Positions 11,839-27,154 are shown, counted from the first letter of the whole stretch. The stretch: 63,956 nt of DNA, filler included, from Octopus bimaculoides (GCF_001194135.2; 6 parts of 6 records of this genome joined end to end with filler, not necessarily neighbours in it), one strand, 5' to 3'. Notes: generated by a model not told the origin, from the letters alone. Numbers and translations: made by a program.

Positions 11839-11965
11839 ATGTTGCATTTACCTAAGGCTTTGAGACTGACATCTCGTTGCCGGAGCAAAAGTTTGTCGAG
11901 ACTCAGCTCCTGTTCTGCTGTGGCCGATACCTCTGTCTTAAGCTCCTGCAGGATCTTCTCTACAG
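11839..11965 (+). CDS. First coding exon of the HAD-HAD-CHDH gene; mitochondrial presequence-like peptide
   Basis: Acceptor tttttgttctgcag ends at 11782 and ATG is at 11839. Translation MLHLPKALRLTSRCRSKSLSRLSSCSAVADTSVLSSCRIFST-G is R/S/L-rich with one acidic residue. Donor CAG|GTATGT at 11966, phase 1, matches the next exon. This exon is missing from the ORF track because it is short. Confidence 0.75.
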
Positions 11966-13120
11966 GTATGTATTTGCTACTGTACGGTTTACCCAATCGT
12001 TGAACATATGTTTTTTGCATATGTATGTGTGTATGCGTATTAGTATGAGCAATTATTTAAATGCAATATTTTGCTGTGCATTATAAAATATTGAAATTAT
12101 GATGCTTCAATATTGTTCTTTGCTTCTTCCTCCATTGCTGTTCTCTCACCTATGTAGAGACAGTATGCTGAGAAAGAATAGCTATGTCTGGGCATTAAAT
12201 TGCTATGTTTTTGGGATTAAATAGTGAACGGATCATGGATGAACAGCTCAGTCTTTTTATGTAGTTATGTTAGCATCCATATTTAAATAAATGTATCTAC
12301 AACATTTAGCTATTTATTTACTTAGGAAAATGTTTGGAATTTCTGTAAGAAAAGAAAAAATTATTTTCTTTTGGTCAGTTTTAAATCTAAATGAAAAAGA
12401 TTGTTTGATTATGAAATAACTTTGCAATGACAAAATTTCTTACAAAAATTATTTCTATAATATTTTACACCTTCTTTCCTACTTTTTTTCTCTCTCAAAC
12501 TTTGTATTTCTGTAATTGTTGTAGTCATGTAACAGATGTTCTCAAGTTAGCAGTTTATCCACTAAAATGTGACAAACTTGCTTTAAACTCATGACAAGTC
12601 TGAGTAATAAAGCTTAATTTTCTAGTTGCTTTATACTTCTAGAATTTCAGTTGTCCATTCATTTCATTGAATTCTTATTCAATGATATGGATATCTATTA
12701 TTTATTGCTAACACAAAAGTCATGGTGACATACTTCCACCATGAGCAGATTTTAAGATGTAAATGTTTAAGTAGGCAAACTACAATATTGAATGCTTTGT
12801 ATTGGTGTAGTTTTGAGAATAAGTTTTGCTATTTTTGTTGTTCATTCTAAGACTTTTCTTCTATCTTGTCAACTGTTTTTTTCTAAAATGTTTATATATA
12901 TAAAAGAAACTGGTAATTTTCAGTTAAATATTGTTGAAGAGAGAGAAAAAGAGGTCTAACTATGAAAAGCCTAAACAAAACACTTGTAGTGTTAATATTT
13001 GAAGCACTTTGTTCCCCTCCCAGCTAGATGTTGTAGATAATAATTTTAAGGTGTTTAGTTAGTGATTGGTGTCTTCATGCACCTTGGGTCGTTGTTGTTA
13101 TGTGGGTTGGTGTGTTGCAG

Positions 13121-13316
13121 ACCAAGGTCAGAGGGTGCTGTACAGTTCGGCTGCACAAGCCAATCTAAAGAAGCAGCGTAATGATGACAAAACTTCAAAC
13201 ACTAAACAAGACTCCAGCAAGCGGAAGAAGATGTCTTTGGTGATATTTGACAAAGATGGTACTTTAATCTGCTTCCAGTCGATGTGGGTACCTTGGGCTA
13301 AGAATTTGGCTGAAAA
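13121..13316 (+). CDS. Coding exon 2: linker and start of HAD domain 1 (motif I FDKDGTL)
   Basis: Acceptor tgttgcag|AC; G+AC gives Asp in frame. Encodes [12 protein letters not shown]...[29 protein letters not shown]. DxDGT is at 13249-13263. Donor AA|GTAAGT at 13317, phase 2. Confidence 0.92.
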
Positions 13317-13939
13317 GTAAGTATGTATCCTGTCTCGTGTGGATGTGAGAATGAGAATGTATGGGTGTCTGCTACTTGGAAAATCTGTTTAAAAACCATG
13401 CCCATGGTTTAGAAATACTCTGATATATCTGATAATTTTTTGGAGGATTAATATGGAATAATTTACTGGTGCCAGTTAGGGAATGGAAAACATTATTTTG
13501 TCATAAAAATTTTTTTAAATTACATTTTCTTTGTTTTTAAGATTATGCCAAATTTACGATGCACTTCTCAAAACTATTGGTAGTATTTGATAATTATTCA
13601 AGAGGATCTTCCATTCCTAAATAGCTGTGCGATTCTATTCATTCCTGTCTCCAATAAACCAACCTAAAAAAAAAAAAGAAATTAATCGTTATAAGTTAGT
13701 TTGATTTTAACCTGTTTGTCAACTTCTAGTTTGTTGATGCATTTGTCTGTTGTGTAGAAAGTAACCGATTCAGTTTGTACAAGTCTATTTAAGTTAACAT
13801 AATAATTTTAACCTTAGATGGCTATGATAGCAATGGGGGGGGGGACTGTTATGACTCTCCATACAGTGTATGCATATTTCTGTTGTGTTACACGACAACA
13901 CCAAAACTGGCAAATATTTTGTTTTCATTGAAATTTTAA

Positions 13940-14156
13940 CCCTTTAGCATTTAATTTGGCCATATCTGGCCCAAATATTCTACCTGTTTTATGTTAAAAC
14001 TAACTAGATATAATCTCTCACACATACCCTACAATGTCATTCTAAAAATATACAAACACATTGAAATCTTGAAGCTACAAAATAATGCATGATTAATTCA
14101 AAACAATGTGAATAAATAAGCAATACATTTGACAAAGACATCTGAATGCTAAAGGG
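13940..14156. mobile_element. piggyBac-like MITE with TTAA target-site duplication (intron 2)
   Basis: TTAA|CCCTTTAGCATT ... AATGCTAAAGGG|TTAA; TSDs at 13936-13939 and 14157-14160. Confidence 0.85.
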
Positions 14157-14465
14157 TTAAACAAATATTTTGATTGCTATCTGTGATTAGTTTTTACTCC
14201 TAACCAATTTCTTGAGTGCGTAAAGTTTTTAATGTAGCAGTATGTGAAGACATTACATCCTCCCCACAACCACTTAATTTTTTCTAAAAAAATTTAAAAA
14301 ATTTTTTTTTTTTCCATATTTCCAAAGCAAATGTTTGGGTGGATGTTATTTTTTACTTACTAATAAAGATTAACTAGTACTTGTATATTTTAAATACTAT
14401 GTTCCTTTTGAGGGTAGTTAGCATACCGTATCAGGAACTTTAACATAATTCCTTTATCCTTACAG

Positions 14466-24689: not shown

Positions 24690-24980
24690 TTTTGTTTTTG
24701 TTTTTTAAGCCTGGTACATATTCTATCAGACTCTGTTACTTAACCACTAAGTTACAGGAACATAAACAAACCTACACCAGTTGTCAAGCAGTGTTAAGGC
24801 ACTGATACAAACACACACACACACACACACAACAAGGTTCTTTCTGTTCCTGTCAGCCAGTTCCATTCACAAGGCTTTGGTCAGCCTAAGGCTATCATAA
24901 AAGACTCTTGCCCAAGGTGCCATGCAGCAGGACTGATCCTGAAACCATGTGGTTGGGAAGCAAACTTCTTACCACATAGC
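24690..24980 (-). mobile_element. SINE family A
   Basis: aagcctggtac.tattctatc...ggttgtcaagc...cacaaggctttggtc...catgtggttgggaagcaa. Confidence 0.8.
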
Positions 24981-25664
24981 CCCAAACCTCTTCCTTTTAA
25001 CAGTTATTTAATTTGATCAGTTTTGATAAATTAATTAATTAATTATTTAGAAGCTATGATAATTTAAGACCAATAATAATGATAATATCTGATCTCATAC
25101 TTGTTGTTCCATTCTTAATATCTTTCTATATATATATTTTTTTTTCCTGTCTTTCTTATTCTATTAATCTTAATCCATATTAGAGGAAATATTCACTTAT
25201 TTATATTTGTGCTAAAATAATTTTTCTTTTCACTTTATTCTGCTCCACATTTCTTTTTCATCTTTATTGTTACCACATTTATCAAAATATAATTCATTCT
25301 CTCTATCTGACATCTTTAAAAAATTTTTTTAGCCCTCTCCACTTTTCATACCATGTCTTGTTCCTGTTGATATCTGGAAAGACTATGCCTGTGTGTTAGT
25401 TAAGGGTAGGGGTCTAGTATGTCTGAGAGTGAAACTGTATATTGTGAGTGAAAGAATAAATCTGTCCATGTTATTTGCGATATTCTGAAAGGCAGGCAAG
25501 CAATTTTTGCTGGTTTTTTTTTTAATTGTTACTGTTAATCTCTTAATTCTAATAAATAATCAATCAATTATTTATATGCCTTTACCTTGCTTCTTTACCC
25601 TTTCCTTATTTTACCTTTCTTCTTCTATTAAATGGATATAATAATAGATTACTTTATTTTTTCT

Positions 25665-25713
25665 GTCTCCGATGAAGGGAAGTACTGGATCTTCCCAGAA
25701 ACAGTTGTAAGAC
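25665..25713 (+). ncRNA. Type I hammerhead-ribozyme-like motif with core substitutions (intron 4, sense strand)
   Basis: GTCT | CCGATGA | A | GGGAAG-tactggat-CTTCCC | A | GAAAC-agtt-GTA | AGAC. Stems I, II and III can all form; U4 is C and position 11.1 is A. Confidence 0.6.
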
Positions 25714-26796
25714 TCTATCCATAAAATTCTTCAATCTTACCTTTGCTCTCTTTATCTTTTTGTTTTTATATATTTACATATACACACGCTAATACACGAC
25801 TTATAATACCCAATCCTGTTCATACAACGATTGGGGCAAACTAATCGGTATACAGCACTTACTCGGTATTACCTGTATCCTCCGGGGTTTGGTTAAATCC
25901 AATACCCTCCTCAACTTTATATATATATAACGTTTCTTGGTTCTGTTGGCTGCTTGAAAAGGGTTCTGCTGTTCTCTGTAGAATATCTGGACCAGATCTG
26001 ACCGATTTAAATGCGAAAGAGTTAAAACATAAAAGTTTATTCTTTGCTGCCATTAGTATGTCCAGAGCAGTGGGATGGCAGAATTCAGAGAATGACAGTG
26101 CTGTGCAGTTTTTAAGGCTTATCAACCTTTCATCTATTCTGAAATTATTCATAAAATAAGTACCAGCAATATACTGAAGTTGAATCAGTCGATTGCACCT
26201 TACCGTTAGGAATTTTCTTAGCTAGACACTCTAATATTAGAAATCATGAAAATGTTGAACAGTTGAAGATTTAATAGCTTCAAGAGTTTGATTTGTTGGT
26301 GTTTTTCTTTACTTCACTTTATTTTTATTTTTTTCTTGTTTGTTTGTTTGTTTGTTTTGAAGTGGTTGATCATAAATACCTTTCTAAAGAGTACTTGTGC
26401 TGCCATCTCCTACAACGCTGCCCAGTCAAGAGATCTTATTACTATTATTATTATTATTATTTTTCTTCTTTCAGCTATGTTTCCATTTCTTGCTGGGTGT
26501 CTTCCCAACACCTAGGGCAAAGAATCATTATCATTATTAATGTATTGTAATCCTTTACCTTTATAAAATGCTTTGTTTGCTTTACTCTTGTCACCTTTAA
26601 TTACCGCAGCATTTATGTCAAATTTTTTTTAATTTTGTTCTTTAATTAATTTAATCATTATTAACTTATGTTATAATTTTATTAGTCACTTACTTCACAT
26701 ATTTGTTTTGTTCTGTCTGGATTTTAAAGTGAACTTATATATAATTGTTATCTATTGTACAAACTTCTTATCATTCATCTTTCTCTTACCCTCTAG

Positions 26797-27154
26797 CCCT
26801 GCCGATAAACCCTGGTATGTTGACTGCCCACTACCATCATCGACCTCCTTTCTCTGGCAGCCAATCGACTGGTCGTTATTTTAGTACATCTTCAAAAGAC
26901 TCAGTGACAGCCACCAAGGAATATAGTTATGTTGTTGTTGGGGCCGGGTCTGCAGGGTGTGTCCTCAGTAATCGCCTTACAGAAGATGTTGACAATACTG
27001 TACTTCTATTGGAAGCTGGTCCAAAGGACTATTCTTGGAAGATCCACATGCCTGCAGCTCTGATGTACAACCTATGTGATGACAAATATAATTGGTACTA
27101 CATGACAGAACCGGAGAGAGGCATGGACAACCGAGTAATGTATTGGCCAAGGGG
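26797..27154 (+). CDS. CHDH: Coding exon 5 (cut by gap): N-terminal FAD-binding part of choline dehydrogenase (GMC oxidoreductase)
   Basis: Polypyrimidine acceptor ctttctcttaccctctag|CC, phase 1. Encodes [23 protein letters not shown]...[48 protein letters not shown], which closely matches animal CHDH as I recall it. Rossmann GxGxxG at 26940-26957. Runs into N at 27155. Confidence 0.95.

What the first reader, a model, noticed from the sequence alone, without database searches (positions are those of the whole stretch)
11839..27154. In-frame fusion of tandem HAD phosphatase domains with choline dehydrogenase in one mitochondrial protein
Seen: five exons join with canonical GT-AG sites and matching phases (127+196+816+653+358 nt; phases 1,2,2,1). 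The exon 4 donor (AAG|GTAATA, phase 1) fits the exon 5 acceptor (strong pyrimidine tract, phase 1), giving ...PSNKK-A-LPINPG...[14 protein letters not shown] found no canonical AATAAA in the ~450 nt after exon 4. Known: vertebrate CHDH and bacterial BetA are stand-alone GMC flavoenzymes converting choline to betaine aldehyde; glycine betaine is a major osmolyte in marine molluscs; HAD enzymes such as PHOSPHO1 and Pseudomonas PchP release choline from phosphocholine. Inference: the fusion may channel phosphocholine to choline to betaine in mitochondria. An alternative is a flavin-nucleotide or metabolite-repair phosphatase serving the flavoenzyme. I know of no functional description of this architecture, but I cannot check whether it is already annotated.
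Basis: partly seen in the sequence, partly recalled or inferred. Interest (0 to 1): 0.85.

Follow-up and report, generated by a model that had tools for sequence, protein, structure and literature searches.

The report
HAD phosphatase–choline dehydrogenase mitochondrial precursor gene
This octopus gene really does join two phosphatase-like domains to choline dehydrogenase in one reading frame, as in many marine invertebrates, and a conserved cleavage-type motif in the joint suggests the protein is imported into mitochondria as one chain and then cut in two.

Summary
The five-exon, in-frame model is confirmed. Its exons are 11839-11965, 13121-13316, 14466-15281, 21071-21723 and 26797-27154 (cut by the piece's end). 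The window is Octopus bimaculoides. The assembly gap at 23023-23428 lies inside intron 4, and the collinear O. sinensis locus bridges it.

The fusion is real and old:
- About 75 HAD(-HAD)-CHDH proteins occur in molluscs, nemerteans, annelids, flatworms, copepods, crinoids, hemichordates and amphioxus.
- Logan contigs carry the whole ORF without introns.
- In Haliotis, one exon encodes HAD2, the linker and CHDH.

So the architecture is already in databases, but I found no paper describing it.

New points:
- HAD1 keeps all four catalytic motifs. Octopus HAD2 (DLHGT, no motif III Lys, SDCAKN) is probably inactive but still conserved.
- The disordered linker carries R-x-[FY]-S-[TS] in 64 of 74 fused proteins (first 40: 36 found, 0.54 expected). 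This is the mitochondrial processing peptidase R-2 motif. I infer a composite precursor cut into a phosphatase module and CHDH.
- RefSeq also lists HAD-only isoforms for O. bimaculoides.

The HAD1 substrate is unknown. Phosphocholine is the best guess, inferred from the fusion alone.

The parts
11839..11965 (+). Exon 1. It holds the start codon and a presequence-like N-terminus (aa 1-42: 7 K+R, 1 D+E) that ends in RIFST (11950-11964), the same motif as in the linker.
13121..13316 (+). Exon 2. It encodes a low-complexity spacer and the start of HAD1, including motif I DKDGT (13249-13263).
14466..15281 (+). Exon 3. It encodes the HAD1 cap and core: motif II ICTADSRK (14758-14781), motif III SEPKPSP (14857-14877) and motif IV VGDTKVD (14935-14955). 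It also holds the conserved inter-domain hairpin WKDCYVYS and the start of HAD2 with the degenerate motif I DLHGT (15214-15228).
21071..21723 (+). Exon 4. It encodes the rest of HAD2. There is no motif III Lys (SSSEVNAT, 21456-21479) and motif IV reads SDCAKN (21528-21548). The donor is AAG|GTAATA, phase 1.
21732..21734 (+). TGA reached if the exon 4 donor is not used (...SNKKGNN*). This is the end of RefSeq isoform X2 (600 aa), a HAD-only product.
21724..26796 (+). Intron 4. It contains the assembly gap 23023-23428, is collinear with the O. sinensis intron, and has no AATAAA/ATTAAA in 21724-23022. Its last ~30 nt (the pyrimidine tract plus AG) are conserved in four cephalopod sequences.
26797..27154 (+). 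Exon 5, cut by the end of the piece. It encodes the linker and the start of CHDH. In O. sinensis and A. hians this single exon encodes the whole CHDH (aa 598-1188).
26874..26888 (+). RYFST, the linker copy of R-x-[FY]-S-[TS]. It is the predicted MPP (R-2) and Icp55-type cleavage site, 20 residues before GAGSAG.
   Evidence: motif definition from PMC8734313
26817..26819 (+). In-frame ATG (Met605) in the linker. Stand-alone 584-aa CHDH paralogues of O. sinensis and O. vulgaris start at this position. It is Leu in Argonauta.
26940..26957 (+). GAGSAG, the FAD-binding GxGxxG of the GMC oxidoreductase (CHDH) domain.

Best explanation
The window holds most of one Octopus bimaculoides gene. Its main product is a composite mitochondrial precursor with these parts in order: an N-terminal presequence, an intact HAD-IA phosphatase (HAD1), a degenerate but conserved second HAD domain (HAD2), a ~50-residue disordered presequence-like linker, and choline dehydrogenase.

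Shown:
- The reading frame is continuous across the HAD2/CHDH junction.
- The arrangement is ancient and widespread.
- In abalone, HAD2, the linker and CHDH are encoded without any intron between them.

Inferred, about 0.55: after import, the matrix processing peptidase cuts at R-x-[FY]|S-T in the presequence (RIFST) and again in the linker (RYFST). That would release a ~65-kDa HAD-HAD module and a ~62-kDa CHDH. The fusion would then serve co-expression, co-import and fixed 1:1 supply rather than obligatory covalent channelling.

Inferred, about 0.3-0.35: HAD1 is a Mg-dependent phosphomonoesterase that frees choline from phosphocholine for CHDH. HAD2 would act as a non-catalytic scaffold or regulatory partner.

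Alternative splicing or termination after exon 4 probably also yields HAD-only products.
For: Fused ORF:
- The exons and phases are verified.
- Existing models for O. bimaculoides (UniProt), O. sinensis (1188 aa, three XP accessions), O. vulgaris and A. hians carry an identical or conserved (A. hians: TKK-V-LPINP) junction.
- Logan contigs of 4.0-4.6 kb carry uninterrupted 1181- and 1191-aa ORFs with flanks on both sides, so they are probably spliced transcripts.
- In Haliotis rufescens, one 2433-nt exon encodes HAD2, the linker and all of CHDH.
- About 75 fused proteins occur across Spiralia, copepods, crinoids, hemichordates and amphioxus.
- The 3' splice-site block before exon 5 is conserved in four cephalopod sequences.
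- Argonauta has no Met in the linker.

Cleavage:
- The strict motif occurs in 36 of 40 linkers against 0.54 expected from shuffles. Only 2 other occurrences exist in 42,281 aa, and both are in N-terminal presequences.
- It occurs in 28 of 34 further fused proteins but in only 4 of 42 unfused N-termini.
- The 26 residues upstream are enriched in K+R (16.1% against 11.2%) and depleted in D+E (4.9% against 11.9%).
- The linker (residues 584-635) and the N-terminus (1-76) have pLDDT below 50, while both HAD domains are confident.
- MPP is shown to cut Arg5,6 internally at an R-2 motif with an aromatic residue at +1, followed by Icp55 trimming (PMC8734313).
- The O. sinensis and O. vulgaris CHDH paralogues use this linker as their N-terminus.

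HAD domains:
- HAD1 motifs are invariant in all sequences compared. HAD2 is DL[HN]GT in molluscs and more degenerate in cephalopods.
- HAD2 is nonetheless 89% identical between Octopus and Argonauta, the same as HAD1 and CHDH.
Against: - I could not access any O. bimaculoides transcript read spanning 21723|26797.
- RefSeq for this species lists only HAD-only isoforms (598, 600 and 604 aa) and a separate partial CHDH.
- Cleavage is inferred from a motif, composition and predicted disorder. No MitoFates or TargetP run and no proteomic N-termini were available. R-x-x-S is also a basophilic kinase consensus.
- Ten of 74 fused proteins lack the strict motif.
- The HAD1 substrate has no direct support. 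HAD1 scores below all NCBIfam equivalog cut-offs, its structural neighbours are generic HAD-IA enzymes, no bacterial operon context exists, and phosphocholine is not known as a matrix metabolite (my own knowledge).
Confidence: 0.6

Rival explanations
1. There are two independent genes in O. bimaculoides. The HAD-HAD gene ends just after exon 4, or splices to a distant 3' exon. The intronless CHDH exon is transcribed from its own promoter and translated from Met605, with the 'linker' serving as its ordinary presequence. On this view the fused model is a prediction artefact.
For: - RefSeq isoforms X1-X3 are HAD-only...KKGNN* is read-through of the exon 4 donor, and ...KKEILTALL* uses an exon lying downstream of the CHDH stop.
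- Met605 exists in the linker, and 584-aa stand-alone paralogues in O. sinensis and O. vulgaris start exactly there.
- In octopods the CHDH part is a single exon.
Against: - The acceptor and its phase are conserved in four cephalopod sequences, while the sequence further upstream diverges.
- Argonauta has Leu instead of Met605.
- O. sinensis RefSeq gives the fused 1188-aa product under three accessions.
- Abalone encodes the junction inside one exon, and Logan contigs carry it in one uninterrupted ORF.
- The CHDH-skipping isoform shows that the HAD transcription unit runs across the CHDH exon.
- The CHDH exon appears incomplete in the O. bimaculoides assembly: the UniProt models skip its middle. 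That may have prevented a fused RefSeq model.
- As co-existing isoforms this reading is plausible, at about 0.5. As the only truth it is unlikely.
Confidence: 0.1
2. The chain stays in one piece as a bifunctional matrix enzyme that channels phosphocholine to choline to betaine aldehyde.
For: - The fusion of an intact phosphatase with CHDH has been kept across many phyla.
- There is a precedent in the Acinetobacter MtlD structures, where a HAD phosphatase is fused to mannitol-1-phosphate dehydrogenase. They are among the structural hits.
Against: - The linker varies from roughly 45 to 95 residues, has low confidence and is poorly conserved apart from a cleavage-type motif, which is often present twice.
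- The pTM of 0.45 gives no confident contact between the domains.
- In nematodes and cnidarians the HAD is a separate ~300-aa protein, so a covalent link is not required.
Confidence: 0.25
3. The linker motif R-x-[FY]-S-[TS] is a regulatory phosphorylation site (R-x-x-S) rather than a cleavage site. It might even be dephosphorylated by the neighbouring HAD domain to control CHDH.
For: The motif fits a basophilic kinase consensus (my own knowledge). It sits in a disordered Ser/Thr-rich segment next to a phosphatase domain.
Against: - The only two occurrences outside linkers are at the ends of N-terminal presequences.
- The aromatic residue after R-x and the basic, acid-poor upstream stretch are MPP features, not kinase features (PMC8734313).
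- The linker serves as the N-terminus in the stand-alone paralogues.
Confidence: 0.08
4. The apparent fusion comes from a misjoin at the assembly gap 23023-23428, which brought unrelated HAD and CHDH loci together.
For: A gap of estimated length lies between exon 4 and exon 5.
Against: - Both flanks are collinear with one continuous O. sinensis chromosome, with similar spacing.
- A. hians has the same exon order.
Confidence: 0.02

Closest known systems
Composite mitochondrial precursors cut internally by MPP (yeast Arg5,6, Atp25; S. pombe Etp1, Rsm22-Cox11; rice SDH2-RPS14), as reviewed and tested in PMC8734313
   Same: There is an N-terminal presequence plus a second, internal presequence-like segment exactly at the junction of two enzymes. 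That segment carries an R-2 motif with an aromatic residue at +1. The two halves are matrix enzymes, and in other lineages they exist as separate genes.
   Different: - Cleavage is not shown here.
- The partners (a HAD phosphatase module and CHDH) are new for this class.
- The lineages are animals, whereas the composite precursors named in the passages I read of that paper are fungal or plant.
- Many linkers carry two motif copies.
Stand-alone mitochondrial choline dehydrogenase (vertebrate CHDH, ~590-630 aa; sea cucumber AjCHDH, 600 aa, PMC10559093)
   Same: The CHDH part has the same start ([13 protein letters not shown]) and is about 70% identical in amphioxus-to-vertebrate comparisons. A presequence ending in an [FYI]-S-T-like stretch lies at the position of the linker motif.
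   Different: The vertebrate, sea-star and sea-cucumber proteins have no HAD module. In the octopus the CHDH presequence is internal.
Acinetobacter MtlD, a bifunctional mannitol-1-phosphate dehydrogenase/phosphatase (PDB 7ocp-7ocu)
   Same: A HAD-IA phosphatase domain is fused to a dehydrogenase. By my own knowledge it makes the compatible solute mannitol. It is among the structural neighbours of HAD1.
   Different: - It is bacterial and cytoplasmic, and the dehydrogenase belongs to a different family.
- The phosphatase acts after the dehydrogenase, not before it.
- Identity to HAD1 is only ~19-20%.
Phosphocholine phosphatases PHOSPHO1 (Pfam PF06888) and Pseudomonas PchP
   Same: They are HAD-superfamily phosphomonoesterases. 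Their product, choline, is the CHDH/BetA substrate, which is the activity proposed for HAD1.
   Different: HAD1 gives no PF06888 hit, and neither enzyme appears among its sequence or structure hits. HAD1 belongs to the HAD_2 (Gph/PpaX/NANP-like) group and has its own invariant signature, CF(H)SMWxPW and T[AS]DSR.
Stand-alone orthologues of HAD1 (~300 aa) in nematodes, cnidarians and Lingula
   Same: They are 45-55% identical to HAD1, and every stand-alone orthologue compared keeps all four motifs and the same signature.
   Different: They are not fused to CHDH. All are uncharacterised, with names such as 'HAD-like protein' or 'PpaX-like'.

Membership tests
HAD superfamily phosphatase, subfamily IA (C1 cap): HAD1 | Motif I DxDx[TV], with the nucleophile Asp and the Asp+2 acid/base | tested here: met
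   DKDGT at 13249-13263. It is invariant in the HAD1 and stand-alone sequences compared, except for DKNGT in Owenia HAD1 and one metagenome protein, jgi571.
HAD superfamily phosphatase, subfamily IA (C1 cap): HAD1 | Motif II Ser/Thr, motif III Lys, motif IV (G)Dx3-4D | tested here: met
   ICTADSRK, SEPKPSP and VGDTKVD are present, and all are invariant or nearly invariant.
HAD superfamily phosphatase, subfamily IA (C1 cap): HAD1 | Rossmannoid core with a helical cap inserted between motifs I and II | tested here: met
   The AF2 model has mean pLDDT 91.9, with helices at residues 17-95 between strand 1 and the core. The top Foldseek hits are NANP, Gph, beta-PGM and MtlD. Pfam PF13419 and PF00702 score above their cut-offs.
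HAD superfamily phosphatase: HAD2 as an active enzyme | Complete catalytic motifs I-IV | tested here: not met
   Octopus and Argonauta HAD2 have DLHGT (no Asp+2), no motif III Lys, and SDCAKN in place of GDxxxD. The fold is still predicted confidently, and the sequence is 89% conserved between Octopus and Argonauta.
Named HAD-IA equivalogs (phosphoglycolate phosphatase, PpaX, PhnX, beta-PGM) | Score at or above the NCBIfam curated cut-off | tested here: not met
   The best scores are 71 bits against cut-offs of 218 to 225, so no equivalog is reached.
PHOSPHO1-type phosphocholine/phosphoethanolamine phosphatase | Match to Pfam PF06888 (Put_Phosphatase) | tested here: not met
   The family is not among the Pfam hits at E<=0.01.
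GMC oxidoreductase / choline dehydrogenase | N-terminal GxGxxG FAD fold, GMC_oxred_N and GMC_oxred_C domains, and the conserved C-terminal active-site His | tested here: met
   The window shows GAGSAG and 97% identity to O. sinensis CHDH over aa 598-716. The rest lies beyond the end of the piece. The orthologues P0068 and P0002 carry PF00732 and PF05199 and contain the stretch AYHPSCTCKMG. That this His is the active-site residue is my own knowledge; its alignment was not checked.
MPP-processed composite mitochondrial precursor (Arg5,6 type) | An N-terminal presequence and an internal presequence-like segment at the domain junction | tested here: met
   aa 1-42 have 7 K+R and 1 D+E. The linker is basic, acid-poor and disordered. 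No dedicated predictor such as TargetP or MitoFates was available.
MPP-processed composite mitochondrial precursor (Arg5,6 type) | An R-2 cleavage motif (R-x|aromatic-S/T/A) at the junction | tested here: met
   RYFST lies at 26874-26888. The motif is in 64 of 74 fused proteins. In the first 40 it was found in 36, against 0.54 expected.
MPP-processed composite mitochondrial precursor (Arg5,6 type) | Demonstrated cleavage into two mature proteins | not testable with these tools
   This needs import and MPP assays, immunoblots or N-terminomics.

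The most novel reading that the evidence does not exclude
HAD(-HAD)-CHDH is a bilaterian-wide mitochondrial polyprotein. One precursor is imported and cut by MPP at a conserved internal R-x-[FY]|S-T site into a so-far uncharacterised matrix phosphatase module and choline dehydrogenase. 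I found no comparable conserved metabolic composite precursor described in animals. It would tie an unknown phospho-metabolite step, possibly phosphocholine hydrolysis, to betaine synthesis in lineages that lack the vertebrate arrangement.
Probability: 0.45. Interest if true: 0.7.

Novelty: new variant of a known kind. Interest (0 to 1): 0.55.

Why it matters
**An unexplored enzyme tied to betaine synthesis.** Glycine betaine is a main osmolyte and methyl donor in marine invertebrates, and CHDH is its committed enzyme. A conserved, catalytically intact phosphatase has been tied to CHDH for hundreds of millions of years. The nearest CHDH relatives in vertebrates, sea stars and a sea cucumber have no HAD module, and no vertebrate or insect was among the best 120 matches to HAD1. 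That points to an unexplored step in mitochondrial choline/betaine metabolism.

**A testable case of internal MPP processing.** If the linker is an internal MPP site, these proteins are a large, natural set of animal composite precursors. The composite precursors named in the paper I consulted are fungal or plant. They would give a ready system for studying internal presequences.

**A practical point for annotation.** The family is named inconsistently across databases: 'uncharacterized', 'CHDH', 'PpaX-like'. In O. bimaculoides it is split or truncated in both available annotations.

Tried and rejected
- **Bacterial operon context for HAD1.** The long ENA contigs carrying close homologues (L005, L006) are gene-poor and eukaryote-like, so they gave no neighbourhood information.
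- **Substrate assignment by homology.** NCBIfam, PDB sequence search and Foldseek all return only generic HAD-IA relatives.
- **Literature.** Four searches on CHDH combined with HAD, fusion, phosphocholine phosphatase, oyster or mollusc found no description of the architecture. The oyster SNP paper does not give the length of ChCDH in its main text.
- **P0224.** This 591-aa cephalopod CHDH looked like evidence for a stand-alone gene. Its contigs include the intron-like upstream sequence with the same acceptor, and the frame is open from that acceptor, so the gene caller probably just started at the first ATG.
- **Rfam and tRNA scans of the window.** Both found nothing.
- **Full-length AF2 model.** Its pTM of 0.45 is too weak to say anything about contacts between HAD and CHDH.
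- **Not used.** I did not run the search of protein representatives, because it returns no names or taxonomy and would not have changed the conclusion.

Full report
**1.

The piece has N runs at 7376-7959, 11373-11510 and 23023-23428.

| Exon | Coordinates | Notes |
|---|---|---|
| 1 | 11839-11965 | starts with ATG; donor GT |
| 2 | 13121-13316 | AG/GT |
| 3 | 14466-15281 | AG/GT |
| 4 | 21071-21723 | donor AAG\|GTAATA |
| 5 | 26797-27154 | long pyrimidine tract plus AG; cut by the end of the piece |

Joined, they give a 716-aa open frame with the junction ...SNKK-A-LPINPG.... If the exon 4 donor is not used, the frame stops after GNN at 21732-21734. There is no AATAAA or ATTAAA between 21724 and 23022.

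**2. The gap**

The gap 23023-23428 lies inside intron 4, so no reading frame crosses it. The window is collinear with one continuous O. sinensis chromosome segment (L004, CM016876.1) on both sides of the gap. Window 22579-22745 matches L004 14345-14513, and 23429-23984 matches L004 15092-15671. The spacing is 579 nt there against 684 nt here. A. hians has the same exon order. A misjoin is therefore very unlikely.

**3. Identity of the locus and what databases already hold**

The window is Octopus bimaculoides. UniProt A0A0L8FNW9 (815 aa) is 100% identical to the window protein and has the same junction. O. sinensis LOC115221581 isoform X1 (1188 aa, three XP accessions), O. vulgaris CAI9737432 and A. 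hians GAB1602002 are full-length HAD-HAD-CHDH proteins.

Beyond cephalopods, two searches returned about 75 fused proteins:
- HAD-HAD-CHDH, ~1150-1235 aa, in gastropods, bivalves, nemerteans, the annelid Owenia and the flatworm Macrostomum. An acoel (Convolutriloba) has a 1124-aa fused protein whose HAD number I did not check.
- Single HAD-CHDH, ~800-924 aa, in crinoids, hemichordates, amphioxus, copepods and many marine meta-transcriptome contigs. There is also one EukProt entry labelled Rmarinus, whose origin I could not verify.

Vertebrate and sea-star CHDH proteins are unfused at ~590-630 aa. A cloned sea cucumber CHDH is 600 aa (PMC10559093).

The architecture is therefore already annotated, mostly as 'uncharacterized protein' or 'choline dehydrogenase, mitochondrial-like'. 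Four literature searches found no paper describing it.

**4. The fusion is not a gene-prediction artefact**

- Logan contigs L001-L003 (4.0-4.6 kb) carry uninterrupted 1181- and 1191-aa ORFs with flanks on both sides. They are probably assembled spliced transcripts.
- In Haliotis rufescens, a single 2433-nt exon (L009 30495-32927) encodes the rest of HAD2, the linker and the entire CHDH without a stop.
- In octopods the junction coincides with an intron. The last ~30 nt before exon 5 (…tcattcatctttctcttaccctctag) are nearly identical in O. bimaculoides, O. sinensis, A. hians and an unidentified cephalopod contig (L010), while the sequence further upstream diverges. The phase-1 frame is open in all four.
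- Argonauta has Leu where Octopus has the linker Met.

**5. Complications specific to Octopus**

- In O. sinensis and A. hians the whole CHDH part (aa 598-1188) is one exon.
- O. sinensis and O. vulgaris each carry additional stand-alone CHDH paralogues. O. sinensis has models of 584 and 629 aa, and O. vulgaris has two of 584 aa. They sit in the same 90%-identity cluster as the fused protein. The O. sinensis 584-aa copy whose sequence I read (P0063) starts at the linker Met, [26 protein letters not shown]….
- RefSeq for O. bimaculoides lists only HAD-only isoforms. The 600-aa form (…KKGNN) is read-through of the exon 4 donor. The 604-aa form (…KKEILTALL) splices exon 4, in phase 1, to an exon that in O. 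sinensis lies about 510 nt downstream of the CHDH stop, behind the acceptor ttcatttacttcag. That isoform skips the CHDH exon, which shows that the HAD transcription unit runs across it.
- The two UniProt models for O. bimaculoides skip the middle of CHDH. This suggests the exon is incomplete in that assembly and may explain why RefSeq has no fused model for this species.

I conclude that the fused mRNA is very likely made in O. bimaculoides. HAD-only products probably co-exist with it. I could not reach direct junction reads for this species.

**6. The two HAD domains**

Pfam finds two HAD stretches. They are about 40% identical to each other.

HAD1 keeps all four catalytic motifs: DKDGT, ICTADSRK, EPKP and GDTKVD. 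These are invariant in the sequences compared, apart from DKNGT in Owenia and one metagenome protein. Its AF2 model is confident (pLDDT 91.9) and has a helical C1 cap.

HAD2 differs by lineage:
- In molluscs and krill, motif I is DL[HN]GT, so the Asp+2 acid/base is lost.
- In Octopus and Argonauta the motif III Lys is also gone and motif IV reads SDCAKN.
- In nemerteans, Owenia and flatworms, HAD2 is largely intact, while Owenia HAD1 has DKNGT.

Octopus HAD2 is nevertheless as conserved between Octopus and Argonauta (89.2%) as HAD1 (88.5%) and CHDH (89.4%), and it folds confidently. It is best read as a pseudo-enzyme under selection.

**7. What HAD1 may act on**

HAD1 scores far below every NCBIfam equivalog cut-off; the best is 71 bits against 218-225. 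Its sequence and structure neighbours are generic: phosphoglycolate phosphatases, NANP/HDHD4, beta-PGM, AlnB and the HAD domain of Acinetobacter MtlD. It has no PF06888 (PHOSPHO1) match.

Stand-alone ~300-aa orthologues exist in nematodes, cnidarians and Lingula. All are uncharacterised, and no vertebrate or insect appeared among the best 120 hits. Contigs carrying close homologues are eukaryote-like, so there is no operon context.

The only functional lead is the fusion itself. Phosphocholine is the one phosphorylated metabolite adjacent to the CHDH reaction. I give phosphocholine phosphatase activity about 0.3-0.35.

**8. The linker: the main new point**

The segment between HAD2 and the GxGxxG of CHDH varies in length and sequence. 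However, it carries R-x-[FY]-S-[TS] (RYFST in the window, 26874-26888).

| Set | With motif | Comparison |
|---|---|---|
| First 40 fused proteins (linker) | 36 | 0.54 expected from 1000 composition-preserving shuffles each |
| Rest of those proteins (42,281 aa) | 2 | both at the ends of N-terminal presequences: Octopus RIFST aa 38-42, Tubulanus RVFST |
| 34 further fused proteins (linker) | 28 | many have two copies 15-30 residues apart |
| 42 unfused CHDH N-termini | 4 | these often show a looser [FYI]-S-T at the same position |

Further properties fit a presequence:
- The 26 residues upstream of the motif have K+R at 16.1% against 11.2% background, and D+E at 4.9% against 11.9%.
- The motif lies 15-49 residues (median 23.5) before GxGxxG.
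- In the full-length AF2 model of the Argonauta protein, residues 1-76 and 584-635 have pLDDT below 50, while both HAD domains score 80-95.

R at -2 with an aromatic residue at +1, followed by Icp55 trimming, is the motif at which MPP was shown to cut the yeast Arg5,6 polyprotein internally. The composite precursors named in the passages I read of that paper are fungal or plant, and choline does not occur in its text (PMC8734313).

My inference (about 0.55) is that the octopus protein is a composite precursor cut after import into a HAD-HAD module and CHDH. In the stand-alone Octopus paralogues, the same stretch serves as the ordinary N-terminal presequence. The main alternative for the motif is a basophilic kinase site, which fits the presequence-end occurrences less well.

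**9. Verdict**

The fusion is real, conserved and mitochondrial-looking.
- It is already present in sequence databases.
- Only one HAD domain is catalytically competent in octopus.
- The mature state is probably two proteins, and channelling is untested.
- Novelty lies in function, not in the existence of the architecture. The gene links an uncharacterised, invertebrate-wide matrix phosphatase to CHDH, and it is a candidate conserved animal polyprotein processed by MPP.

Noticed in passing
L004 22078-23850; L008 about 14578-16346; L009 30495-32927: In O. sinensis and A. hians the whole CHDH part (about 590 aa) is one exon. In Haliotis rufescens, HAD2, the linker and CHDH share one 2433-nt exon. 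The intron at the HAD2/CHDH junction therefore seems specific to cephalopods.
   Followed up: partly
proteins P0059, P0063, P0065, P0067 (O. sinensis, O. vulgaris); window 26817-26819: O. sinensis has stand-alone CHDH models of 584 and 629 aa, and O. vulgaris has two of 584 aa. All share the 90%-identity cluster of the fused gene's CHDH. The O. sinensis 584-aa copy starts at the linker Met. The O. vulgaris accession numbers are consecutive with the fused gene, so these look like recent tandem duplicates of the CHDH exon. The two O. bimaculoides UniProt models differ at one linker residue (HYHH against HCHH), which suggests at least two copies there too.
   Followed up: partly
L004 24363-24386 (no counterpart inside the window): An exon about 510 nt downstream of the CHDH stop codon encodes (E)ILTALL*, the tail of RefSeq O. 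bimaculoides isoform X1. That isoform splices exon 4 past the CHDH exon and so gives a HAD-only product.
   Followed up: yes
HAD alignment: Owenia, jgi571, Opisthorchis, molluscs: After the HAD duplication, different lineages degraded different copies. Molluscs and krill lost Asp+2 in HAD2 (DL[HN]GT). Owenia and one metagenome protein lost it in HAD1 (DKNGT). Opisthorchis lost it in HAD2 (DKNGS). Nemerteans and Schistosoma keep both copies intact. Opisthorchis and Schistosoma have HAD-HAD proteins (~580 aa) with no CHDH attached.
   Followed up: partly
window 2133-2542 (+), 6410-6721 (-), 7960-8290 (+), 18667-19122 (-), 19514-19719 (-), 24707-24981 (+), plus fragments: A ~410-bp interspersed repeat with an internal (CA)n/(TA)n microsatellite occurs at least seven times in the window, at 70-82% identity between copies. 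It also occurs many times in the O. sinensis locus, at up to 90% identity. It looks SINE-like. Rfam and tRNA scans found no match.
   Followed up: partly
window 25634-26045 against L004 17467-21341: O. sinensis intron 4 carries about 3.5 kb more than the window at this point (about 3.9 kb against about 0.4 kb). This largely accounts for the intron being about 8.5 kb there and about 5.1 kb in O. bimaculoides. It is probably repeat insertions.
   Followed up: no
window 11373-11510: A second assembly gap lies only about 330 nt upstream of the start codon, so the promoter and 5'-UTR region of the gene is incomplete in this assembly.
   Followed up: no
HAD1 alignment A1 (window aa 94-101 and 206-213): The family has its own invariant signature next to the catalytic motifs: C-F-x-S-M-W-x-P-W just after motif I, and T-[AS]-D-S-R after motif II. 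Two invariant Trp residues at the start of the cap could form a cation-pi site for a quaternary amine, but I had no model coordinates to check this.
   Followed up: no
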